Source of the DNA: Diplonema japonicum
Lineage: Eukaryota; Protista; Euglenozoa: Diplonemea
Reading direction: 5' to 3'
DNA length: 64,000 bases
NCBI GenBank assembly: GCA_964019335.1
Contig: OZ025687.1
Coordinates: 186,001 to 250,000, forward strand
Shown: positions 1 through 26,237 of the stretch, one piece after another
Layout: every line of letters starts with the position of its first letter
How positions within the stretch are numbered: the stretch's first letter is position 1
Position numbers and translations under genes: made by a program
Notes under the pieces: generated by a model
Told to the model about the DNA's origin: nothing
The model's database searches: none
The model's input: the letters and a program-made list of their open reading frames with translations, nothing else

Positions 1-2829
1 TGATTCGTACGACTTAATGGCGCTCTGGACATCGCCGAGCGACTCCAGATGTCGGGCGTGTGAGTAGTAGATAGTCCGTAGGTGGATCCTGTCCTTGTCC
101 TCTGCTGTTTTGATGGCTTCGTCCCACCTCCCGCATGCCTGTGAGGTTTGATGGTATTGCGTGTTGTCGATGTATACCTGATGCATGATGTTCAGCAGGT
201 CGTACCTCCCACACTTGATGTACAGCCTTTCTGCATCTTCGATGAGGCCGAGCTGCAGCGCCAACATTGCAATGTGTGCTTCCACCTCGGGCTCCTTCTT
301 GGCTTCCCTTAAGGCACGTGCACCTTTCGCATCCTGCATGTTGCCAAGACAAACCTGTATGATGTGGGTGCGCTGTTTTTCTCACATACCTCAGCAACAT
401 CAAGCCTGCCTGTCTTGACGCACATCTGCGCCATGTTCATCCACACATTCTCGTCTTTGATGAGCTTCACCGATCTATACGCCGCGTCCATGTCCCCGCA
501 GGCGAGGTTGTACGAAAAGTCAAGCAGTGCTTCGCGCACCCTCGGGTCTGTGCAGTCAATGCCCTCGAAGTCACGCATCACCTTCGATATGATGTTGGAC
601 GACAACTCGATGGAAGCCGAGCGTGACTTGCTGTAGAAGTAAAAGTTCGGTACAGAAAGCCCGATAAGCGCTGTCATGGTTTTGTCCAATGGGAACCTCT
701 CTTGTAGTTTTACGCCCTTCGCAGAGGCGAACAGCGTCACCACTTCAATCTTGGACACCTCGGCATTCTCTTCCTCCTTCTCTGCCGCCTCACCGGTGTC
801 CTGCTTCTTGTGCTTACCAGTCTCGCAGGCAAGGATCCGCGGTTCCGTCTCGTCCCAGCAGATGGTGTTCGGTGACCTGTTGAGTGTCGCGAAGTCGAAC
901 GTCATAACCTTGTCGCGCTCCAGGTCGCAGATGAAGACCTTCGTAGCCATCATCTGTTAGGTATTTCATTAATTAATCACAGCATACCGATTGGCCGTGG
1001 GCGTCCGTTTGCTTCGCGAGCACAGCTACCTGACTACCGTTGCAGTTCACAGCAATGCTGTCTATGCTAAGGCTGCCAGGTTCCCAAAGTTGCTTTGGGT
1101 ATCCGTGTGCCTTGTCTTCGCCAGCCCTGCCTCCGATCCACCAGCAGCTTACATAACTCTTGCTAGTTGCGACCACAAGGAAGTCCCCGTTGACGTGTGT
1201 GTGTGTCGCGTCACCCTCGTGAGCCTTTATGGATAGGTGAGAGAGCTTCTGCAGCTGGTGGTTGTACAGCTCGATGCTGCTGATACCCCGCTCAGTGCGC
1301 GTGACAAGGATTTTGTCGGAGTGCAGGGCAACACCCGTGTTCTCGGTTTCGATGACACCCTGTGTGGTTAAATAAAGGAACGGCAACATACCACAGACAC
1401 CGCCTTGTTCATGTGCACGTGGAACACTTCTACCTCTTTGTTGTTCCACGCAGCGAAGTAGGAGCCTGCCAAGTCCACGCCCTTGACGCGGATCTGCGCT
1501 GTGGTAGTGAACACCTGGCGCTGGAGGATGTCCTCGTAGAGCACAAGGTTGGGGGTGAGCTGGATGACGGCTGCGCTGCGCCACAAACGGCGCTTGAGGG
1601 CGGTGCCGTGCAGGATGGAGATGGAGTCCGGAGCTGCGGCTGCTAAGAGGGACTCGCCAGGCCCCCATGTGATGTCGGGGACAGGATCGTCGAGGCGCAC
1701 TTCAGACAGTGAAACCCAGTCCTCCTCTGAGGTGGAAATCTGCCCGCCCGTGTACTGCCAAAACAGCACCTTCCCCCCTTTGGTCCCCCCCACGATGGTC
1801 CGCTTTGCGCTGTTGTACGATATCGAAAGGATCTTTTCTGCTCGCAGCTCTTGCTCGCCTTGCAGGATGTAGTTCTCGTTCGCATCGATGTTCCACACAC
1901 GAACCATGCTCTCGTGCGCGCACGTTGCCAGCAGGCCCTGCCCGATCCAGATCATCTGCGCGGAGGCGGTGTTCGCACCTTTGCCGAAGGATATTCTGAA
2001 CCTCGCTTGCTGGGACCATCTGTTGCCCTCAGCGAGTACGTAGTAGGAGACACCGCTGGCTTGGTTCATGGCGACAAGGCCGCTCTTCTGCGGGTGGTAG
2101 AGGAGGGAGGTGATGGGCTGGTTGTCGAGGTTGAAGACGACGCTGCAGTTGCCGTCCTCGTCTACACCCCACACGTTACCGGAGGTGCCACCCATGAACC
2201 ACGTGCACTGCTCGTTGAAGCGTGCGACGGGGTAGGCAGGGTTCAGGTCGGGCTCGTCCTCGTCCTCGAGCATGAGACGCTGCTCGTCGTTGAGTTCGCT
2301 CTCCTCGTTAGCAACGTTGTTAAGCTGGCGTTCTTTGGGCTTCGCACGGAAGACGACATGTGTGAGGGCACCCTCAAGGTATTCCCTGTCCTTGTTTGAA
2401 TTGTGTTGAGATATGACATTCCTTTCGCCTCTCCACACACACCACACACCGTGCGTGTCGCCGGTCAAGACCTTGTCGCCAGCAGTGTTCCAGCAGACAA
2501 TCCCTAGTGGGTTTCCTTTGTGTGGTGAGGAGACTTCTTGAACTTCATTTTCTGCAGACCAGATTAGGATCGACCCGTCCTTCCACCCCGTGCAAAGAAC
2601 TTTTCGCCTTGGGTGCCAATCAAATGCTGTACATGTTAAACAGTTATCGCTCGAGTTCCCGTGACAGAAGCTGTGGATCAACGCACCTTCGTCTGCGTAA
2701 ATGCTGACCCGTCCGGCGATCCCGAACTCCCCTGACGAGACAGCTAGTATAGGATACTGGGGGTGCCATTTGTTTCCCAACACCGCCACCTGCTCCGACT
2801 TTATCTTGAAGTTAAAATGCAGCGCCATT
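1..2829 (-). CDS. IFT140: Intraflagellar transport protein 140 (IFT-A subunit), 3' end runs off the window
   Basis: Starts MALHFNFKIK (ATG at about 2829). N-terminal WD40 propeller (WHPQYPILAV, FDWHPRRKVLCTGW), then TPR region with '[53 protein letters not shown]'. In-frame GT-AG introns at 1360-1391, 954-987, 355-389, 139-177. Confidence 0.93.
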
Positions 2830-4766
2830 GTTTCAGGGCTTTTCTTCTTCTTTTTTTTTTTTTTTTTTTTTTGGTCTCCTCTTTTTTCTTTTCCTTCCTC
2901 CGCCCCCTCCTGTGTATGTGGTGTCTTTTTTTTTTTTTTTTTTTTTCCTTCCTCCAAATGAAAATAATGAAACAGATATAAAAAAAAAAAAAAAAAAGAT
3001 AATGTCGCCGAATGGTACAGAGGAAAGCTCATTAAAGAGAAATAACCTCGTAAGTAGAAAGAAAACCAAAAAAAAAAGAAAAACCACAGATTTTCGAAGC
3101 AACCGGGGAAAGGGAAGGGGGGGGGGGGACTGTTCTTTTTCTTTTAAAAAAAAGGAAATTTCGATTTAGTTCTGGCCTAAGGACACGGATCTTTCAATAT
3201 AATAAAAAGAAGAAAAAAAGGAGAGAGGGGGAGGAGGGGGGGAAGAGGAGAGACTATCAAGACACCTCCATCTAAGCATCCTCGCTTTCTTTTAAAGCTG
3301 GAACAAAAGTGGTTCAGGATGCAAGCAGAAGTGTCGCTCTTCTTTTCGGTATTCTTGAGTAGGTACACAAAAATCTTCTTTTTTTTTCCCTCCCCCTTCC
3401 CTCTTTTGTTTTATATTTATATTTTATAATAGGTTACAATGTTATTACTATATGTATCCCCTTTTCATTCCCCCTTGCTGGTCCTATTGCGTGACGATAT
3501 CCCAGCGGGGGGGAGGGGAGTGGAAATTATTTTCATTTTTCTTTCCCATAACAACCTCACTATTTTGCAAAGGAGGTGTTTCAAGATAAAAAAAATGTAA
3601 ACTTCAAAGGGAAGGAAGAGAGAGATGGGGATCTTCTTCATTTTACAAGAAGAGCTACTGTTAAATATAAAAATTCTTTTAAAAAAAAAAGAAATTGTCA
3701 ACTCGTGCCTATTTAAAAACCCTATTCTTTTCTTTTCTTTTTTTTTTGCTTTTCTCCCTTTCCTTTCTCGAGCGAAGAAATCAAAAAACGGCAAATCTTT
3801 TTTTTTTTTCCCCGTTTCTTTTTAAATTCATGTTTTCATGTTTGTCAACAACAAGCCTTTTCTTCTTCTTTTTTTTTTCTTTCTCAAAAAAAAAAAGATC
3901 TCTTTTTTCACCAAAGAGTCGCTTTCTTCTTTTTTTCTTTTTTCTTCTCTGGTTCACAGCGATTCTTAGAGGAGGGGGGGGGGGGGGGGGGGGGAGAAGA
4001 AGAAAAGACGTTTAGCTCACTTCTTGCCAACATTCGCGAAATGCGGAAAAGGCTTCTATGGTAGCATTGAAGGAAAGAATAAAAATAAAAAGCCCATACG
4101 AGCAAGGAAGCCTGCTAGTGTCCCTACACACTGTAGTGTAGTCAGAAAAGTGAATGACAGGTGGGGGGGGGGGGATTCTTTTTTAGAGTAATCAAGGTAG
4201 AAAATCACTTTGATGTGGGGGGAAAATGGCAGCAACAAGCCCCACCGGAAGGAACAAAAAAAAAGATTACAGTAAGTCACTATGAATGAATGAAGGTTTA
4301 AAAAAAAGAGAGGGAAGAAGCGGGAAGGGGGGGGGGGGGGGGGATGGTCAAACGCAGTGGGAACTAAGCCTTGCTGTGCTTTTTAAAAAGAAATAACAGT
4401 TTGTCTCGGTTCAGTTCAAAAGCTTGTTTATCCATAAACTGCCTTTGCCTCCCCCCCCCCCCCCCCCCCCTCTGGTGGTATATAAATTCCTTTGGACAAA
4501 TAAATAAGAAGAAACGGAAGGGGGGGGAGAGAGAGAGAGCAGGATTTCTGCTTTTATGGGAGTTCTTTTAGAGAGAAAAAGGAAGATAGACGCCCGAGAA
4601 AAAAAAAAGAAAAAAACAGAAAAAAAAAGAGTAAAAGAATGGATGGCTCTTTATTACCAAACAAACGAATCAACAATTGAACTCGTTTATTTTCTTTTTT
4701 CATGTTTTCTTTTTTTTTTTCTTTCTTTCTTTTCTTTTTTCTCTTTTTTGCACGAGGGACCATGCA

Positions 4767-4799
<33 letters not shown>

Positions 4800-5037
4800 A
4801 TGGGTAACGAGAGTTAACACTGTTTGGTTTCTAAAATTCACTTCCTGTATTTCTTTTTTTTTTTTCTCTTTCTTTTTTACAGCATGATTTCAAATGCTGG
4901 ATATTAAAAAAAAAAGACATGAAAATCTCACAAGTACTGCGATGTATGTAACTATGGCCTGCCTAGGATGAGTAGGACCATAAGGGACCTCCCCTCTTGG
5001 AGTGAAAGTACAGAAAAAAACATAAAAAAAAAAAAAC

Positions 5038-5233
5038 TCAAATTAACATGCAAACTCCCAGAGCGAAAGCCGCATGCCCTAAAAAGGGAGGGGGGTATGG
5101 TCAGTACTAGGTATCTCTCAGTTTCGATCTAATCTTGCGACTCCTCCAAGTGCTGATCTCTTCAGGCAAGAAGCACCCTTCATTGGCTCCCACTAGCGTC
5201 CCAGCAGGTTTGGAGAGTACTTTTCCCGACCAC
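5038..5233 (-). ncRNA. Hammerhead-ribozyme-like element, copy 1 (non-canonical strand order)
   Basis: Minus strand reads UCUUGC-CUGAAGA-GAUC...AGUC-GCAAGA-UUA-GAUC-GAAAC. Core CUGAAGA at 5165-5159, GUC at 5141-5139, GAAA at 5125-5122. Homologous to 20222-20386 with covarying stems. Confidence 0.72.
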
Positions 5234-5807
5234 AAAAAACATAAAAAAAAAAAAAAAAAAAAAACAGAAGTAAAAGATAGATGAACTATGCTCTTCCAGA
5301 CATCACCCATGGCATCCGTGAGAGGGCAAAGGTGCACAGTCTCCTCGTCTTTACCCGCTTTGGAGGCGCCGTCACTCGCCCAAGACCGGCTGGTCTTGCT
5401 GCCCCCCCCCCCCCCCCCCCCCCCCACAAAGAAAATAAATAAATGAATAAATAAAGGAACATTCGTATGGGGGCAAATTCTTCTTGAAACAAATACGGGG
5501 GAGGTGGGGAAGGGGAGGGGGGAGGGGAGCTTAGGTAACGGAGTTCTATTGTCCTAGCTTTTGAAATAATATAAAAAAAAAAAATATACATGGTGCCCTT
5601 TTTTTTTTTCTTCCCAAGTTGTTCTTTGCTTTTTCTTCCCCCTCGTGTCTTCTTGAGGGAAAGGAGGGATCGGGGAATCTATATATGTATTCCCCCCACT
5701 TCCCCCCCCCCCCCCCTTCTTTTCTCCTTCTCTTCTTTTTTACTTAAGAATTATAATAATAAAGCCGATAAAAGGTTTCGTGAGGTCAAATTCTAGACTT
5801 TTCTTTT

Positions 5808-20171: not shown

Positions 20172-20221
20172 TGTTATATTACTTTTGGTTCCCCCCTCCC
20201 TCACCTTTCTTTAATTAAAAT

Positions 20222-20386
20222 TCAAATTAACACGCAAGCCTGAGACGAAAGCCGCATGCTCTAAAAAAGGACTAGGTATCTCTCAGTTTCGGACATATCT
20301 CACGACTCCTCCAGGTGCTGTCCTCTTCAGACGAGAGGCACCTTCAATGGTTCCTACTAGCGTCCCAGAGTACTTTTCCCAACCAC
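20222..20386 (-). ncRNA. Hammerhead-ribozyme-like element, copy 2 (non-canonical strand order)
   Basis: Minus strand reads UCUCGU-CUGAAGA-GGACA...AGUC-GUGAGA-UA-UGUCC-GAAAC. CUGAAGA at 20330-20324, GUC at 20306-20304, GAAA at 20290-20287. Confidence 0.72.
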
Positions 20387-20540: not shown

Positions 20541-23500
20541 CTAAGGCCACCTGGCGAGCGACCGTTTCAAAACCGCTACGTACACCCAGACTGAAAGGTA
20601 ATCGTTGTTCCCGCAGGAGAAAAAGCCTTTGGTGTAGACTCCGATCGCGAATTCTACGTTGGGGTCCGCTGGGTCGGTGCTGTGGATGGCAGTGTGGGCG
20701 ATTGCACGCTTGATGGTTGCGAAGTCACTCCAAGGGAAGTGAAAGGGGAACCCGTGCATTTCGTACGATGAAAGGGCTTCGCGAAGGGAGGTGCGGTGAT
20801 AGTCAAGGATCTCCGTGTGCTTTGCAGCAAGCCAAGCCTCGCTTCCGTCGCCCTCGCCCCTGCCTCTATCATAGCCTTCTGTGTATGCTTGTTCCATCGC
20901 AGGCAGCAGTACGTGGTCCAACACCTTTCTGCCGTGAATGTCTAGTAGATTCCTAAACGTCGTGAGCATGTTCTTCACAGGGCTTCGCAGCTCCTTCATC
21001 TGCGATTTTAATTCATCTGTGAGCAAGACCTGTATCCTCACCTCCTTCTCCTCCGCAATAGGAAGGTATGTCCCTATCGACGCTTGACACGACTCCTTCG
21101 GCACGCTGTTCATATCCAAAAACAATGGCCGCCACGACCGCCCTGCAAACAGATTCCACTCCATCCTCCTCGGCAAGCTTGTCGCCTGTACATTGCACAA
21201 TATGTTTGTGTGGTTATAAACCACGCTGATGTCCTTAAGAGGACATTTGTTGCTGTGCAGGGAGTACCTGTCTCCGGTGACAGGATCCCACAAGAAATAC
21301 GCATCGGGGTTGATGGCGTCTATTGTAAGAACAAACGACGCCTTCAAGTGCTTGTCGGTGCTGCCGAGCACGACCCAGACTTCGGAGAACCTTCTGAACG
21401 GAGGGTGGCACAACCACTGGAAATAGTTGGCGAGCAGGCTGCTGTGTTCGTCATAGTCACCTGCCCCTGTCTCGAGGAACTCGAGTGAAGTGCTCCAACA
21501 CGTGCCGGTGTCATCGTCGCGCACCACAACCGTCTCCAGGAAAGGGATGATGCTGACAAACCGGGAAATCGTGAACTCGGGTGGGATCTCGCTGTTCTCC
21601 AGCAGCTCTTGCGGGGGCACCAGGCCGTCTTGTCGGACGTACCTGCTGATCAGTGTCGCGCGTTTGTCGGTGCTGTGCACCAATGCCATGATCCTCTCCA
21701 TCCTGGCATGCCCGCTTGGTGCTACATTTTTGACTGTTGAACGACATCTTGCCAACCACCGCTGTGCGTGCCAGAACAGCTGGACAGGTTCATTTGAATG
21801 CAACGCATCAAACGAGTCGGAAATGCTCCTCGGCGCGCTGCCTGGCGACAGGGTGATGTAAAGCGAGAGCGTCGAGAAGTTGTTCATCGCCTGCTCTTGG
21901 GAGGAAGGAAGATCAGACTGTTGTGCGTAAGCCAGCGACACAGCTGGTGCCTGCAGCCGCAGCGTGCCTTCCCACGTTGATCGTGTCGAATTGTACACAG
22001 TGGCAAACGGGATCTCGCAGCTACCTAGGAACTTCTTCATCTCGTAGTAGTTCACAGTCTTCCCCTCTGCCTGCTCGTGCAGATCGTTGCCGAGCCTGTG
22101 GCTCTTCACCTTGTCGAAGAGGCGTACTTCTATCGGATCATTCATGACGGCCAGTGTCTCTGTTTTCAGATCGTCTGGTAGGTTGAGTTTCACTGTCTCG
22201 AAAAACAGTGGGTCCGGCCCCACGGCGCTCCTGCTTTTCTTTGGATTGCTGACCCCGAACCTCACCTCAGCGAAGACATCGAGGTCCACATCTGCTTCCT
22301 TCTTCTCATCTTTGCTCTCCTCCAACCCGAGGCCCACTGAACCAAACCCGGACCCCCTAGGCTTCGCAAGCCGAACGGACTTCTTGCCTTCGCTCAAATG
22401 TGCCGAGCATCTCACAGGCAAGTTGCTGCCACTCTTGATGTACACCAGCAGGGTAGGCTTCTCCCCAGACATCTCTGCAACCGTCTCATCGATAAAGCGC
22501 CTGTAAGGCCTGAGTTTTGAAATCGGCTGGAAGAAGTCGATCAGTACGTCGAAGATGTTCCTTTGCACCTCATCGATAGGCTGTGTCACCATTTCATTCA
22601 GCAGCTCGTTATCACGCATGGTACCCTTCTTCGCAAGCAGCGCTTTCGCTTTCCTGATCTTGGCTTGCCACGCCTCAGTCGAAAGCACGTTCTTCTCATC
22701 ATCAGACTCAGATTCTTCAGGGTCACGCTCCCAGTCTTTCTCCTGAGGGAGCCTTGGGACAGGGAGGCTGCGCGATCCTGCAAGCAGCCTGTCCTGCCTG
22801 TCTGCGATAGGTGCCTTACTTTCGATCAGCTTCCACCTACGTTTCAGGAGCTTCGTCCTATCCATGAAGCCCTGTCGTGGCGTGATGTGCGGCGGCGGAA
22901 GAAGGACAGAGGCCAAGGGGCCGTCCTGCTCTTGGGCCACCATCCTCCGCTTGCTTCGGGTAAGTGCCGCCCCGTGTCTTACCGCGAGACGTTTTATGAG
23001 CGGCTGATGCACAGGGTCGTTGGGGTCCATCCTGCCGGCCACAACCTCCTTTGTGACTTCCTTGAGATCCATCAACTGTGTGTTGTTGATGATGGGCAGC
23101 GGTGCCCGCGAAGGGAAGCCCTTTTCATGCTGCGACCAGAAGGCCTCGACAAGCATACAGCCAGCTGTCTGCACATCGGAGGAGAACGGGTGCCATGCTA
23201 TGTTCCTGCTTGACTGCGCAGCGCCTGGCTCAAATGGCGAAGCGCCAAAGGGAGGGGTCACTGTGACATATCCACATGAAAAGCTTCGTGTCAGACCGCG
23301 CCCTCTCTGGATCACCTGGATGAGCAAGGCTTCAGGTTCCTTGGCCAAGTGGAGCCTCACAAGGCTATTGAAATCGACATTGAAGTCCTTCCCCATAGGC
23401 TTCCACTCTGTCTTAGCTGCCAATCGGCCCCTGCCGTCCCCGTCTTTGAGCCGCACGAACAGCATACACTTGTACAACAACTTATCGTGCAACTCCTTGC

Positions 23501-25886
23501 TGGGCTGGATGTTGAGTTGTGGTGTGACAGACTTCAATATGTCAAAAGCGGTGCCCGTCGTATTGCCGACATCAGCAGCAGGGTACCTGCGGATCAGACC
23601 AAATGAAATGCCCTCAGGCAGCCCTTGATCTTGCAGGGCATGCCATTCGTCCAGCATTTGCCTTATTAGGTCTACCTCTTCTTCTATCGCCTGGTCCCTT
23701 AGTCGCCTTGCGTCGTGAAGACTCCGCAGTACATCGGGTTCAACCTCGTGCTCCCGCATCACAGCCTCCAGCTCCTGAATGGCTTTTGGCAGCTGCAGCA
23801 CTCCCTGCACTTCGCTTCTGGTGTTCAGCAGATGTGACTGCAACGATGTAATGGTGTTGGGGCCGATGGCACCGTCAATAGCATGACGGGTAAAAGAGTG
23901 CAGCCCAAGGACTATTTGCAGTGCCTTGCGATCGTCGAGGCTGAAGGTCAGCATGCCGTCCAGAGGTTCTGTCCAGAAGTCCCGTGGCAAGTCGCCAGGG
24001 AGCTCTTGGTCAGGGAAGTTACGCATGAATGTGGTGCCCTCTAGCACAAGCCAGTGTTTCAAGGATATGAGTACGTTAGAAGGCAGGTCTGTGAAGCTGT
24101 CATCACACGTGTCAGGGACCCACGTGACTGCATCTTCATAAGGGTGCGGAGTTGCTGCAAACAAAAAATCTGTGAGCGCTGCAAGCGTTCTCTTCCCAAA
24201 GTCTCCATCCTCCACGTGCGGCTCCGACCAGATCTCATCAACAACCAAACCTGCCTTGCGCACTGCCTCGCCGTGAACTCCACTGACAGCAGATTTCACC
24301 ATGTGCTTGATGAAGTCTTCTACCTTCCGCTCTGCAACTCTGCGTGACGGGTGCGGTGGGGCAAGCGGGGACTCGCTCGGCACAGGCTGTTTTGTGAGTT
24401 TGTGGAACTCACGGAACATCTGAGCGAGTGCCGCTACTCTCCTGTTGACTATTGTGAACTGCGGGTGCTCCACAAAGGAGACCTTGCTGATGTGCACGTC
24501 AAGCTGATATGTGTCCATCCCGCCACGGCTAGGACCTTCCTTGTTGGGTACAGCTACGTAGAGCCGTGATGACCACGGCTTGGGACCCGTCAAGGTACTG
24601 ACATCAAAGGGACCCACAACGTGCTCAGACAGCGGGTCGACAGTGCTTCGCAGAAGCCCCGTCTCAGGATCGATGTACTTGGAAATTGGGGTATCGGTGC
24701 CTGCAGCTGCAAAAAGGCGCTGCTCTAGGGAAGATGAGAGGTGCTTGAGGATGGTGGGCTGCTTGACCTCATGCTGCCCGTCGCTACCGGCTAGGAGGTA
24801 GTCAACAGGCACGCAGCAGGGTATCTTGTCTTTTGTGAACAGTGACTCTGCTTTCTCCCAGAACCCCGTGATGGCGTCCGTGTGGAGGATGGAGGCACGC
24901 TCTCGTATGGCTTGTGCCAATGCAGCAGGCGGGGGTTTTTCAACAGCAGCTTCTTGTGGGGCTTGGCCCTCCTCTTGTATCTCGATTCTTGGCGGTGCCT
25001 CTTCTTCGTTATGCATCCTCGGCATGGGGGATTCCTTCACCTTAGCCAAGTCTGTGAAGGACTGCAACATGTTGTCGAACAGCCCGTACCCCAGCCCGTG
25101 GCTTTCCCTCCCAAGCTCTGCAGCAGCATCCTTCAAAGACAGCGCTGCAAGCGCGGCACCCGTCGGTTTTGTCACACCGAAGGTCATGCTGGGCTCGATG
25201 CGGTCTTCCAGTAGTGTATGCACAACAACGGTGCCCCCTGTCATGCTCCTCGAGCTGTGCAGTCCCCCCATCCCGTAAGGGCAGCTTGCGTTGCACAGCA
25301 AGTGTTGCGGGTCGAAGTTCTTACGCATGACGTGGATGGCAACGTTGCTTGACTTGAGCTTGAAGTATTGCACCGTGTCAAGAATGCGTTGGACGTAGTA
25401 AGGGGTCTGGTAAGTGATGCCCTTGCTGAGCTCTATGCGGGGGTGCGTCTGCCACATCCAGGAACGGACGGTGCGCTCTTTTCCGCATGTGTTGCACGCC
25501 ACATGACACTCCATGTCTTCTGTGTTCAGCATTTGCAGGTGGTTGCAGCTCAGGCACACTGCGTCTGAGTATTCAGCGCCATCGAGGACGCTCTCCTCGC
25601 TTTTTGCCGACAGCAGCGCTTCGCTCTCCCTGTCGCCCAGCTCGTAGTCGATGATCTGTTGTGTCTCTGTTGAGATCTGTACCAACGTGTCGGGTGCACC
25701 GAGCCTGCCTTGTGCCTGCCCTTGCCTGTCCCCCCATCGCCCCCTCAAGCTGCTCCCTAGCACTGGTGACACAACGTCAGGGCCTTCTTGGTCGGGGTGT
25801 GTTGCTGGTGCTGTAACAGGCGGCTCATCTGTCGATAGCTGCGATGGTTGTGATGGTGCTTGGGGCTCCCGCCCCCATCTACTCAT
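20541..25886 (-). CDS. CC2D2A: Coiled-coil and C2 domain protein 2A (MKS6)-like transition zone protein
   Basis: About 1780 aa single exon. Contains FFQPISKLRPYR, a C2 domain (LLVYIKSGSNLPVR...KFLGSCEIPFATVY), transglutaminase-like GAGDYDEHSSLLANYF, and C-terminal SVWVYVAVL. Confidence 0.85.
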   Translation of the reverse strand: MSRWGREPQAPSQPSQLSTDEPPVTAPATHPDQEGPDVVSPVLGSSLRGRWGDRQGQAQGRLGAPDTLVQISTETQQIIDYELGDRESEALLSAKSEESVLDGAEYSDAVCLSCNHLQMLNTEDMECHVACNTCGKERTVRSWMWQTHPRIELSKGITYQTPYYVQRILDTVQYFKLKSSNVAIHVMRKNFDPQHLLCNASCPYGMGGLHSSRSMTGGTVVVHTLLEDRIEPSMTFGVTKPTGAALAALSLKDAAAELGRESHGLGYGLFDNMLQSFTDLAKVKESPMPRMHNEEEAPPRIEIQEEGQAPQEAAVEKPPPAALAQAIRERASILHTDAITGFWEKAESLFTKDKIPCCVPVDYLLAGSDGQHEVKQPTILKHLSSSLEQRLFAAAGTDTPISKYIDPETGLLRSTVDPLSEHVVGPFDVSTLTGPKPWSSRLYVAVPNKEGPSRGGMDTYQLDVHISKVSFVEHPQFTIVNRRVAALAQMFREFHKLTKQPVPSESPLAPPHPSRRVAERKVEDFIKHMVKSAVSGVHGEAVRKAGLVVDEIWSEPHVEDGDFGKRTLAALTDFLFAATPHPYEDAVTWVPDTCDDSFTDLPSNVLISLKHWLVLEGTTFMRNFPDQELPGDLPRDFWTEPLDGMLTFSLDDRKALQIVLGLHSFTRHAIDGAIGPNTITSLQSHLLNTRSEVQGVLQLPKAIQELEAVMREHEVEPDVLRSLHDARRLRDQAIEEEVDLIRQMLDEWHALQDQGLPEGISFGLIRRYPAADVGNTTGTAFDILKSVTPQLNIQPSKELHDKLLYKCMLFVRLKDGDGRGRLAAKTEWKPMGKDFNVDFNSLVRLHLAKEPEALLIQVIQRGRGLTRSFSCGYVTVTPPFGASPFEPGAAQSSRNIAWHPFSSDVQTAGCMLVEAFWSQHEKGFPSRAPLPIINNTQLMDLKEVTKEVVAGRMDPNDPVHQPLIKRLAVRHGAALTRSKRRMVAQEQDGPLASVLLPPPHITPRQGFMDRTKLLKRRWKLIESKAPIADRQDRLLAGSRSLPVPRLPQEKDWERDPEESESDDEKNVLSTEAWQAKIRKAKALLAKKGTMRDNELLNEMVTQPIDEVQRNIFDVLIDFFQPISKLRPYRRFIDETVAEMSGEKPTLLVYIKSGSNLPVRCSAHLSEGKKSVRLAKPRGSGFGSVGLGLEESKDEKKEADVDLDVFAEVRFGVSNPKKSRSAVGPDPLFFETVKLNLPDDLKTETLAVMNDPIEVRLFDKVKSHRLGNDLHEQAEGKTVNYYEMKKFLGSCEIPFATVYNSTRSTWEGTLRLQAPAVSLAYAQQSDLPSSQEQAMNNFSTLSLYITLSPGSAPRSISDSFDALHSNEPVQLFWHAQRWLARCRSTVKNVAPSGHARMERIMALVHSTDKRATLISRYVRQDGLVPPQELLENSEIPPEFTISRFVSIIPFLETVVVRDDDTGTCWSTSLEFLETGAGDYDEHSSLLANYFQWLCHPPFRRFSEVWVVLGSTDKHLKASFVLTIDAINPDAYFLWDPVTGDRYSLHSNKCPLKDISVVYNHTNILCNVQATSLPRRMEWNLFAGRSWRPLFLDMNSVPKESCQASIGTYLPIAEEKEVRIQVLLTDELKSQMKELRSPVKNMLTTFRNLLDIHGRKVLDHVLLPAMEQAYTEGYDRGRGEGDGSEAWLAAKHTEILDYHRTSLREALSSYEMHGFPFHFPWSDFATIKRAIAHTAIHSTDPADPNVEFAIGVYTKGFFSCGNNDYLSVWVYVAVLKRSLARWP

Positions 25887-26237
25887 GTTACCTGGTTGCT
25901 GTGGTTGGCGGTGTTGAAAAAAAAGGGGAGGGACAAAGCGCCGGAAAGGCTTCCACAAGGTATGCGAACACGTGCGGCATCCTTTGCGAGGCAAATGCCC
26001 GCGGCATACAAAGGAAAAGAGTGGGCTAGAAACCTGGGCAACGTTCTTACGGAAGTCCCCCCCCCCGTTCAAACTTTATCGGCTGTATAAATACAATAAA
26101 AAACTTGTTGTAAAAGAAGGGGGGGGGGGGGGGAAACAAAGAGTTTTGTTCAAACCCGGCAACTGCTCTTTTTTGTACAACACAAAAAAAAAAAGAGAGA
26201 AAGGAAAAATCTTCTTTTTCTCTTCCCGTCCACATTA

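What the first reader, a model, noticed from the sequence alone, without database searches (positions are those of the whole stretch)
5121..5180. Hammerhead ribozyme core in a non-cyclic ('knotted') strand order, supported by covariation between two copies
Seen on the minus (transcribed) strand. Copy 1: GGGUGCU-UCUUGC-CUGAAGA-GAUC-AGCACUU-GGAGG-AGUC-GCAAGA-UUA-GAUC-GAAACU. Copy 2 (20345-20285): AGGUGCC-UCUCGU-CUGAAGA-GGACA-GCACCU-GGAGG-AGUC-GUGAGA-UA-UGUCC-GAAACU. All canonical core nucleotides are invariant (CUGANGA, G10.1-C11.1, GAAA, GUC), while the differences between copies fall almost entirely in stems and preserve pairing. Stem II changes GAUC/GAUC to GGAC(A)/(U)GUCC (two double compensatory changes). 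Stem I changes UCUUGC/GCAAGA to UCUCGU/GUGAGA (one double change plus two G-U wobbles). Stem III is ACU/AGU in both. Established: hammerhead types I, II and III are cyclic permutations of strand A (CUGANGA), B (GAAA) and C (UH). Here the order is A-C-B: the cleavage strand sits inside the stem II loop, the distal ends of stems I and II are joined by a 2-3 nt linker, and an extra helix (GGUGC/GCACY) clamps strand A. Inference: either a double-pseudoknotted hammerhead topology I do not know to have been described, or an obligate dimer/trans-cleaving ribozyme in which one molecule's A+B cuts another's C. Predicted cleavage is between 5139/5138 and between 20304/20303.
Basis: partly seen in the sequence, partly recalled or inferred. 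Interest (0 to 1): 0.93.

Follow-up and report, generated by a model that had tools for sequence, protein, structure and literature searches.

The report
Permuted (type-CSG) hammerhead in a retroposon
A short mobile element present about 300 times in this kinetoplastid genome carries, on the transcribed strand, a complete hammerhead ribozyme core in the rare knotted "type-CSG" strand order, a form so far known from only two metagenome sequences, giving it a host organism and a biological setting for the first time.

Summary
Both minus-strand sequences read as stated. A strict descriptor for this strand order hits only these two sites in the window and none in 300 resampled windows.

The motif is not a lone RNA gene. 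It lies inside a 197-260 nt SINE-like retroposon with target-site duplications, variable 5' truncations and a constant 3' end. There are about 300 copies, all oriented with the flanking genes where this could be scored (40 of 40).

Three subfamilies differ by one compensatory pair in stem I and two in stem II. N7 and H17 vary only as a hammerhead allows, and no core nucleotide changes. Pseudoknot-free folding explains none of this.

Eckert et al. 2023 (PMC10085705) named it the type-CSG hammerhead and showed that both known examples self-cleave in cis. This family has the same architecture: a 6-bp clamp helix, 6-bp stem I and 4-bp stem II. Its stem III is only 3 bp.

Cleavage was not testable here, because no raw RNA reads and no close relatives were available. 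The finding is a new member of a known kind, in a new host and context. Other first-stage notes flagged the same motif elsewhere in this genome.

The parts
5037..5233 (-). Retroposon copy 1 (short form, 197 nt): GTGGTCGGG ... TTAATTTGAG
   Evidence: Boundaries come from the alignment of 33 copies with flanks and the flank analysis. This copy is 98-100% identical to at least 12 other copies.
5234..5255 (-). Target-site duplication of copy 1, upstream copy (TTTTTTTTTTTTTATGTTTTTT)
   Evidence: A 22-nt exact direct repeat abuts both ends of the element (sequence).
5015..5036 (-). Target-site duplication of copy 1, downstream copy
   Evidence: sequence.
5120..5178 (-). Type-CSG hammerhead candidate, copy 1 (clamp helix through stem III)
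5173..5178 (-). Clamp helix P0, 5' strand GGGUGC. It pairs with 5148-5153 (GCACUU).
   Evidence: Cells are 96-99% paired, with G.U<->G-C variation only. It is the only helix that nested folding also predicts.
5159..5171 (-). Block C: stem I strand 2.x UCUUGC (5166-5171) plus core CUGAAGA (5159-5165). The stem II strand 10.x GAUC follows at 5155-5158.
   Evidence: Among copies N7 varies A/U/C while the other core letters stay fixed in the subfamily consensuses.
5133..5142 (-). Block S: stem III strand AGU (5140-5142), C17 (5139), and stem I strand 1.x GCAAGA (5133-5138). The predicted cut lies between 5139 and 5138.
   Evidence: Stem I pair 2.3-1.3 is C-G in 50 sequences and U-A in 26.
5120..5129 (-). 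Block G: stem II strand 11.x GAUC (5126-5129), GAAA (5122-5125), and stem III strand ACU (5120-5122). The UUA linker at 5130-5132 precedes it.
   Evidence: The stem II pairs are G-C 59 / A-U 22 and U-A 41 / A-U 32.
20221..20386 (-). Retroposon copy 2: an older subfamily with two internal deletions, about 150 nt downstream of the stop codon of the 1843-aa ORF at 20541-26072
20285..20342 (-). Type-CSG hammerhead candidate, copy 2. C17 is at 20304 and the predicted cut lies between 20304 and 20303.

Best explanation
The motif is a hammerhead ribozyme of the non-circularly permuted type CSG. Its block order is CUGAnGA block, cleavage-site block, GAAA block. It sits in the middle of a SINE-like non-LTR retroposon of a kinetoplastid.

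The RNA is made as part of the one-strand polycistronic transcripts, because every copy that could be scored lies in the sense orientation.

Shown here:
- stem I (6 bp) and stem II (4 bp) cross each other;
- they are tied together at their far ends by a 6-bp clamp helix on one side and a 2-3 nt linker on the other;
- together with a 3-bp stem III they enclose a complete hammerhead core.

Inferred from the published type-CSG ribozymes: the fold places C17 in the usual active site and the RNA cuts itself 3' of C17, between 5139/5138 and between 20304/20303. This leaves a 2',3'-cyclic phosphate and a 5'-OH.

More speculative: the cut either processes the element's own read-through RNA or severs the 3' UTR or intergenic RNA that hosts it.
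For: 1. The sequence and pairings are confirmed.
2. The descriptor is specific: 2 hits in the window, 0 in 300 resamples, and all 62 hits in held sequence belong to the family.
3. Covariation: on 57 copies, 96.9% of cells pair against 24-45% for slid controls, with three pairs changed on both sides. On 99 distinct copies aligned with a model that does not contain stems I or II, 93.3% of cells pair, with C-G 50 / U-A 26, G-C 59 / A-U 22 and U-A 41 / A-U 32. The stem I states stay matched against different stem II backgrounds.
4. Between P0 and GAAACU, the three subfamily consensuses differ at about 11 sites. Six of these form the three compensated pairs, one strengthens the clamp, and the rest are spacer or linker. 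None falls on a core nucleotide.
5. N7 is A, U or C, and H17 is C, U or once A, as the hammerhead consensus allows.
6. Nested folds do not explain the conservation. The RNAalifold consensus has 0 compensatory pairs, and MFE z-scores are +1.3, -0.7 and -0.2.
7. The same block order is published as type-CSG. CSG-1 and CSG-2 cleaved at the predicted site with kobs 0.004 and 0.026 per min. Their oligo sequences give a 6-bp clamp, a 1-nt spacer, a 6-bp stem I and a 4-5-bp stem II. This family has a 6-bp clamp, a 1-nt spacer, a 6-bp stem I and a 4-bp stem II (this is my own parsing of the oligos).
8. Orientation is sense in 40 loci, antisense in 0, unclear in 16.
Against: - No cleavage data exist. 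The public runs are held only as contigs, which cannot show RNA ends.
- Stem III has only 3 bp and never covaries. The two active published examples have 4-5 bp.
- The subfamilies are only about 12% apart, so an unchanged 13-nt core is not significant by itself. The covariation amounts to a few events inherited by many copies.
- Genomic 'fossils' give no support. Eight copies 5'-truncated within the 40 nt before CGAAAC start at scattered points, and only one starts at G1.1.
- A cut in the middle of the element does not create the element's own ends, so the benefit to the retroposon is unclear.
- Some copies lack the clamp's 5' strand through internal deletion.
Confidence: 0.6

Rival explanations
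1. The pseudoknotted fold is real and selected in the master copies, but it is not a working ribozyme. It would serve retroposition, for example as a structure recognised by the partner reverse transcriptase. Or it would bind a protein through a hammerhead-like or k-junction-like three-way junction with tandem G.A pairs.
For: - Covariation proves the helices, not catalysis.
- The flanking parts of the element are equally conserved between subfamilies.
- Stem III is short and invariant.
- There is no excess of copies starting at the cut site.
- A mid-element cut has no obvious use for a SINE.
Against: - All 11 conserved core nucleotides, the A15.1-U16.1 pair and an allowed H17 sit in the exact register between the verified helices.
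- The only variable core positions are the two that hammerheads leave free.
- The two published RNAs of identical architecture are active.
Confidence: 0.25
2. It is a hammerhead that works only between molecules or between two copies in one transcript. Blocks C and G of one copy would cut block S of another, because the 3-bp stem III and the tight linkers disfavour the cis fold.
For: - Stem III is only 3 bp. Hammerheads with minimal stem III in Penelope-like elements cleave as dimers (Lunse et al. 2017, cited in PMC10085705).
- Some loci hold two copies 270-480 nt apart.
- There are about 300 sense-transcribed copies.
Against: - Published type-CSG ribozymes were assayed and described as cleaving in cis.
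- Most copies are solitary.
- The 6+3-bp arms are weak for trans recognition.
Confidence: 0.08
3. The hammerhead motifs occur together by chance in a repeat, and the apparent covariation reflects subfamily structure only.
For: - The scan covers very many windows, so rare chance motifs will turn up.
- The compensatory changes are few events shared by descent.
Against: - There were 0 hits in 300 resampled windows.
- Six of about 11 subfamily-diagnostic sites in the module fall pairwise on predicted partners and restore Watson-Crick pairs.
- Slid controls lose the pairing.
Confidence: 0.03
4. It is a multicopy small-RNA gene (snRNA, snoRNA, RNase P/MRP-like, or another Pol III transcript ending in a T run).
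For: My first impression rested on T runs after the element, a GCCAAUGA box and a UUUUUAG stretch.
Against: - Rfam 15 gives no hit at gathering score in the window, and nothing relevant at E<=10 locally.
- The T runs are target-site duplications of variable length.
- The copies show 5' truncations and decay typical of a retroposon.
Confidence: 0.02

Closest known systems
Type-CSG hammerhead ribozymes CSG-1 and CSG-2 (Eckert, Friedrich, Weinberg & Weinberg, Nucleic Acids Res 2023, PMC10085705)
   Same: - The block order is C-S-G, with two pseudoknots in the core.
- The full conserved core is present: CUGAnGA, GAAA, U-H at the cleavage site.
- A helix flanks block C directly and ties stems I and II together.
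- By my parsing of the oligos: a 6-bp clamp, a 1-nt spacer before stem I, a 6-bp stem I and a 4-5-bp stem II.
   Different: - There is no sequence similarity outside the core.
- Stem III has 3 bp here, against 4-5 bp in the published RNAs.
- The stem I-to-stem II linker is 2-3 nt here, against about 5-6 nt.
- The published pair comes from metagenome DNA of unknown organisms, with 'modest covariation'.
- This family sits in an identified eukaryotic genome, inside a roughly 300-copy retroposon, with three compensated pairs.
- Activity here is untested.
Type-SGC hammerhead ribozymes (HRIMA-1 motif; same paper)
   Same: They are also a non-circular permutation, with a short linker between stems I and II and an extra helix joining their other sides.
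   Different: The block order differs (S-G-C). They are found almost only in metatranscriptomes, probably in circular RNA agents, not in genomic DNA.
Hammerheads carried by mobile elements: Schistosoma SM-alpha SINE, Penelope-like elements, retrozymes (PMC4209133, PMC7761336; partly from my own knowledge)
   Same: In both cases a self-cleaving hammerhead is embedded in a non-autonomous or autonomous retroelement present in many copies.
   Different: Those are classical type I or type III hammerheads that Rfam models detect. This family is invisible to those models. Its ribozyme sits mid-element rather than at a terminus or in a terminal repeat.
[quoted passage not shown]
   Same: - They are short non-autonomous retroposons in the intergenic regions and 3' UTRs of polycistronic units, preceded by a T-rich stretch.
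- A conserved structured segment there is tied to site-specific RNA cleavage.
   Different: - No shared sequence could be tested here.
- SIDER2 cleavage is thought to be protein-mediated, and no ribozyme activity was found.
- The L1Tc ribozyme is HDV-like and lies at the element's 5' end.

Membership tests
Type-CSG hammerhead ribozyme (Eckert et al. 2023) | 5'-to-3' order is block C (CUGAnGA with adjoining stem I and stem II strands), then block S (stem III strand, cleavage site, stem I strand), then block G (stem II strand, GAAA, stem III strand) | tested here: met
.
Type-CSG hammerhead ribozyme (Eckert et al. 2023) | All highly conserved hammerhead core nucleotides are present, with no insertions between the core and the stems | tested here: met
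   C3 U4 G5 A6 N7 G8 A9, G12 A13 A14, A15.1-U16.1 and H17 = C are present in both window copies and in all three subfamily consensuses. N7 is A/U/C, and H17 is C/U and once A.
Type-CSG hammerhead ribozyme (Eckert et al. 2023) | Stems I and II are supported by covariation | tested here: met
   One pair in stem I and two pairs in stem II changed on both sides. Cells are 92-95% paired on 99 distinct copies.
Type-CSG hammerhead ribozyme (Eckert et al. 2023) | Stem III is supported by covariation | tested here: inconclusive
   Stem III is 3 bp (ACU/AGU) and essentially invariant. Only 2 of 99 sequences show a double change.
Type-CSG hammerhead ribozyme (Eckert et al. 2023) | A helix brings the other sides of stems I and II together | tested here: met
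   GGGUGC/GCACYU directly flanks block C and is 96-99% paired. Variation is only G.U<->G-C, so the helix is present but not proven by double changes. The feature is described.
Type-CSG hammerhead ribozyme (Eckert et al. 2023) | Site-specific self-cleavage 3' of H17 that a core mutation abolishes | not testable with these tools
   The runs are held only as contigs and show no RNA ends. The genomic proxy of truncated copies starting at the cut site shows no enrichment.
Classical hammerhead types I / II / III (Rfam models) | Cyclic block order that forms an unknotted three-way junction and is detected by the Rfam covariance models | tested here: not met
   No Rfam hit in the window at gathering score, or locally at E<=10. 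RF00163 gives no hit above cut-off anywhere in the genome. The block order makes stems I, II and III mutually crossing.
SINE-like non-LTR retroposon | Dispersed copies with variable-length target-site duplications, a constant 3' end and variable 5' truncation | tested here: met
   Target-site duplications of 6-22 nt. Truncation points are scattered. At least 150 model hits. Contig depth over the element is about 200-400 times that of the flanks.
SINE-like non-LTR retroposon | A poly(A) or simple-repeat tail, and a 3' end shared with a partner LINE | tested here: not met
   There is no tail between TTTGAG and the duplication. There is no similarity to the 3' region of the one APE+RT LINE I could read. 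Other LINE families could not be fetched.
SIRE / VIPER of Trypanosoma cruzi (my early guess) | T. cruzi host; element equals the split direct repeats of a tyrosine-recombinase retroelement; no target-site duplications | tested here: not met
   There is no T. cruzi mucin family. The spliced-leader 3' part reads ...CTTTATTG, not the Trypanosoma form I recalled from memory. Target-site duplications are present. Neighbouring ORFs are host genes or a LINE.

The most novel reading that the evidence does not exclude
The roughly 300 sense-oriented copies are active type-CSG ribozymes that cut polycistronic pre-mRNAs or 3' UTRs. The organism would then have a genome-wide, RNA-catalysed layer of transcript processing or decay delivered by a retroposon. 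This would be an RNA-only counterpart of SIDER2-mediated decay in Leishmania.
Probability: 0.15. Interest if true: 0.85.

Novelty: new member of a known kind. Interest (0 to 1): 0.6.

Why it matters
Non-circular hammerhead permutations were first reported in 2023. For type CSG the authors had only two similar metagenome sequences and no host organism. [quoted passage not shown]

This family would supply several things that are missing:
- a culturable-type eukaryotic host, a kinetoplastid;
- a mobile-element context, which extends the long-known link between hammerheads and retroelements to the knotted permutations;
- dozens of apparently intact copies in at least three covarying subfamilies;
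- a natural test set for the geometric rules of this topology, since the clamp, stem I and stem II lengths match the published pair.

Every copy that could be scored is transcribed in sense within polycistronic units. Activity would therefore bear directly on how such transcripts are processed. The family also shows that standard Rfam models miss this class entirely.

Tried and rejected
1. Small-RNA gene (U4-like K-turn, box C/D, RNase P/MRP CR-I, Pol III terminator). Rejected: there are no Rfam hits, and the T runs are target-site duplications.
2. T. cruzi SIRE/VIPER 3' repeat, guessed from the one-strand gene array and a shared 5' extension. Rejected. The PNAS 2000 paper is not held, and no paper contains the sequence.
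3. A canonical type I or type III reading using flanking sequence. No register pairs (worked by hand).
4. Hairpin-ribozyme and HDV-like readings. The helices do not fit (by hand), and Rfam is silent.
5. RNA-end evidence. All 17 runs are Logan contigs. Laying four of them showed only high repeat depth and subfamily variants.
6. Relatives in other organisms. Two metagenome pattern scans gave 0 hits. The nearest homologue of the adjacent 1843-aa protein is 39% identical, so no close genome was reachable.
7. Partner element. Only one copy lies near an RT ORF. That ORF belongs to an APE+RT LINE separated from the copy by a host-like gene, with no shared 3' sequence.
8. A Penelope-like origin, suggested by other notes. 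This could not be supported: the only GIY-YIG hit is a single 362-aa ORF, and one degraded RT locus has no model hit.
10. 'Fossil' test for retroposed 3' cleavage products. No enrichment at the cut site.

Full report
OBSERVATION

In standard hammerhead numbering, copy 1 runs as follows:
- clamp strand GGGUGC (5178-5173), then a 1-nt spacer;
- stem I strand 2.x UCUUGC (5171-5166);
- core C3-A9 CUGAAGA (5165-5159);
- stem II strand 10.x GAUC (5158-5155), then A;
- clamp strand GCACUU (5153-5148);
- GGAGG;
- stem III strand AGU (5142-5140);
- C17 (5139);
- stem I strand 1.x GCAAGA (5138-5133);
- linker UUA;
- stem II strand 11.x GAUC (5129-5126);
- GAAA (5125-5122), whose last A starts stem III strand ACU (5122-5120).

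Copy 2 has the same layout, with C17 at 20304. A descriptor that encodes this layout finds only these two sites in the window. It finds none in 300 first-order Markov resamples of the window. In all other sequence I held (about 290 kb), its 62 hits all lie in the same repeat family.

WHAT CARRIES THE MOTIF

The two sites are not isolated genes. A search of the window's own 62.5-Mb assembly with copy 1 gave 41 scored matches out of 252 candidates, at 88-100% identity. Copy 2 gave a further, more divergent set. A covariance model gave at least 150 hits, which is the scoring limit. In public runs of the same organism, contig depth over the element is roughly 200-400 times that of the unique flanks.

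Alignment with flanks shows a unit that runs from GTGGTCGGG to TTAATTTGAG, 197 nt in copy 1. Many copies carry a further 63-nt 5' extension starting CGCGCAGGAGCC.

The copies are flanked by direct repeats of 6-22 nt in T-rich DNA. For copy 1 the repeat is a perfect 22-mer at 5255-5234 and 5036-5015. There is no poly(A) tail. The 3' end is constant, while 5' ends are truncated at many different points. This identifies the strand carrying the motif as the sense RNA of a SINE-like retroposon.

The host is a kinetoplastid:
- ORFs run almost entirely on one strand.
- The genome holds 264 copies of a spliced-leader-type 20-mer ending ...CAGTTTCTGTACTTTATTG|GT.

The host is not Trypanosoma cruzi, so my early idea that this was the SIRE/VIPER repeat is rejected.

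In 40 of 56 loci the flanking open frames lie on the same strand as the motif, in none on the opposite strand, and 16 were unclear. Both window copies lie between minus-strand ORFs. Copy 2 starts about 150 nt after the stop codon of a 1843-aa ORF.

IS THE FOLD REAL?

The family falls into subfamilies whose consensus sequences differ by about 12%.
- Stem I is UCUUGC/GCAAGA in one subfamily and UCUCGC/GCGAGA in the others.
- Stem II is GAUC/GAUC, GGUC/GACC or GGAC/GUCC.

That makes one compensated pair in stem I and two in stem II.

On 57 distinct copies, 96.9% of pair cells are standard pairs. The figure is 24-45% when partners are slid by 1-3 columns. All 68 double-change cells fall in the three compensated pairs.

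I then aligned 99 distinct copies with a model that contains only the outer helix, the clamp and stem III, so the alignment cannot lean towards stems I and II. The proposed structure still pairs in 93.3% of cells. The counts are C-G 50 / U-A 26 for pair 2.3-1.3, G-C 59 / A-U 22 for 10.2-11.2, and U-A 41 / A-U 32 for 10.3-11.3.

The stem I state is matched in several stem II backgrounds. Either the compensation arose more than once, or recombinants kept it.

Between the clamp and GAAACU, about 11 sites distinguish the subfamily consensuses:
- six form the three compensated pairs;
- one turns a clamp G.U into G-C;
- the others lie in the spacer or linker;
- none touches a core nucleotide.

The core's only variable positions are N7 (A, U, C) and position 17 (C, U, once A). 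These are the two places where hammerheads are free.

Pseudoknot-free models fail. RNAalifold finds no compensated pair. Minimum free energies are no better than shuffles, with z-scores of +1.3, -0.7 and -0.2. The clamp helix is the only nested helix predicted consistently, and it shows only G.U<->G-C variation. Stem III (3 bp) does not vary.

Caveat: the double changes are a handful of events inherited by many copies. With subfamilies this close, an unchanged core is expected about one time in five anyway. The helices are well supported. Catalysis is not shown.

WHAT IS KNOWN

Rfam 15 has nothing here, and the type I model finds nothing above threshold in the whole genome.

[quoted passage not shown] The authors divide the hammerhead into block C (CUGAnGA), block S (cleavage site) and block G (GAAA). 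They report natural types SGC, CSG and GCS.

Both cleaved at the predicted site, with kobs 0.004 and 0.026 per min. The authors note a helix that brings stems I and II together, and they rate the evidence as weaker for want of covariation.

From the oligonucleotides in their supplement I read CSG-1 as follows:
- clamp AUGCGG/CCGCAU (6 bp), then a 1-nt spacer;
- stem I UGGUUG/CAACCA (6 bp);
- CUGAUGA;
- stem II GGGG/CCCC (4 bp);
- stem III GUUGU/ACAAC (5 bp);
- C17.

CSG-2 is the same, with a covarying clamp and a 5-bp stem II. The present family has the same clamp, spacer, stem I and stem II lengths. It has a shorter stem III (3 bp) and a shorter stem I-to-stem II linker (2-3 nt against about 5-6). 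No later paper in the library uses the term type-CSG, and none reports a natural hammerhead in a kinetoplastid retroposon.

MECHANISM AND RIVALS

Best reading (0.6): this is a cis-cleaving type-CSG hammerhead, transcribed as part of polycistronic RNA, that cuts 3' of C17. The fold is shown. The cut is inferred by analogy with the two active published RNAs.

What the cut is for is open. It does not make the element's ends. Eight 5'-truncated genomic copies in the relevant 40-nt interval start at scattered points, and only one starts at G1.1. So there is no trace of retroposed cleavage products. By position, the cut could sever the 3' UTRs or intergenic RNA that host the element. This recalls SIDER2-linked site-specific cleavage in Leishmania, which is however thought to be protein-mediated.

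Rivals:
- a selected but non-catalytic fold, serving RT recognition or protein binding (0.25);
- a hammerhead that works only as a dimer or in trans because of its 3-bp stem III (0.08);
- chance (0.03);
- a small-RNA gene (0.02).

WHAT COULD NOT BE DONE

- Raw RNA reads were not available.
- Two metagenome scans found no relatives.
- The nearest protein homologue of a neighbouring gene is 39% identical.
- The one LINE I read (APE+RT, 1911 aa) shares nothing with the element.
- A Penelope-like origin, hinted at by other first-stage notes, found no support. The only GIY-YIG hit is a single 362-aa ORF.

VERDICT

The finding is real and not ordinary, but it is not a new topology. It is a new, well-populated family of the recently described type-CSG hammerhead. 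It is the first such family tied to a named kind of organism and to a mobile element. Cleavage remains to be shown. Other first-stage notes on other contigs of this genome describe the same motif, which fits its roughly 300 copies.

Noticed in passing
G000, e.g. L062:1490-1520 (C1:890276-890295), and 263 other places: A spliced-leader-type 20-mer (AGTTTCTGTACTTTATTGGT) occurs 264 times, dispersed over many contigs. Many copies lie within a few kb of contig ends rather than in one tandem array. What follows the GT in L062 did not look to me like a trypanosomatid SL intron (from memory).
   Followed up: partly
G000 genome-wide; L125:4250-9985 minus: There are very many reverse-transcriptase loci: 625 candidates, and 150 scored, nearly all above the Pfam cut-off. 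Several size classes have intact open frames of 1430-2185 aa. The one I read is an APE+RT non-LTR element with a 1911-aa ORF. Retroelements therefore look active in this genome.
   Followed up: partly
window 5037-5233 minus: 5228-5233 with about 5096-5101: The element's first six bases, GUGGUC, can pair with GACCAU just 3' of the ribozyme module, which would enclose the whole module. Copy 2 lacks the 3' partner. The pairing was not tested for covariation.
   Followed up: no
L010:1480-2500 minus (C12:106534-107216); L030 about 1500-1980 (two copies starting at about 1500 and 1769): Some loci hold a 5'-truncated copy followed directly by a full copy, or two copies about 270 nt apart. In such RNAs two ribozyme cuts would release a unit-length piece, as in retrozymes. 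L006 and L010 also share a longer upstream segment of about 277 nt.
   Followed up: partly
L069, L072, L082, L096: Several copies have an internal deletion. It removes the region from about CTCCAAACC through the clamp's 5' strand but keeps blocks C, S and G. These are natural 'clamp-less' variants that could be used to test whether the clamp is needed.
   Followed up: no
window 309-3032 minus: An IFT140-like gene appears as three consecutive or overlapping minus-strand ORFs (1368-3032, 973-1668, 309-953). This suggests a frameshift, an assembly error or a pseudogene.
   Followed up: no
window about 5040-5085 and 20225-20262 minus: The 3' part of the element forms a GCAUGC...GCAUGU hairpin. Its inner sequence differs between subfamilies (CGCUCUGGGAGUU versus CGUCUCAGGGGCU). 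This may be a second covarying structure, perhaps the part recognised for retroposition.
   Followed up: no
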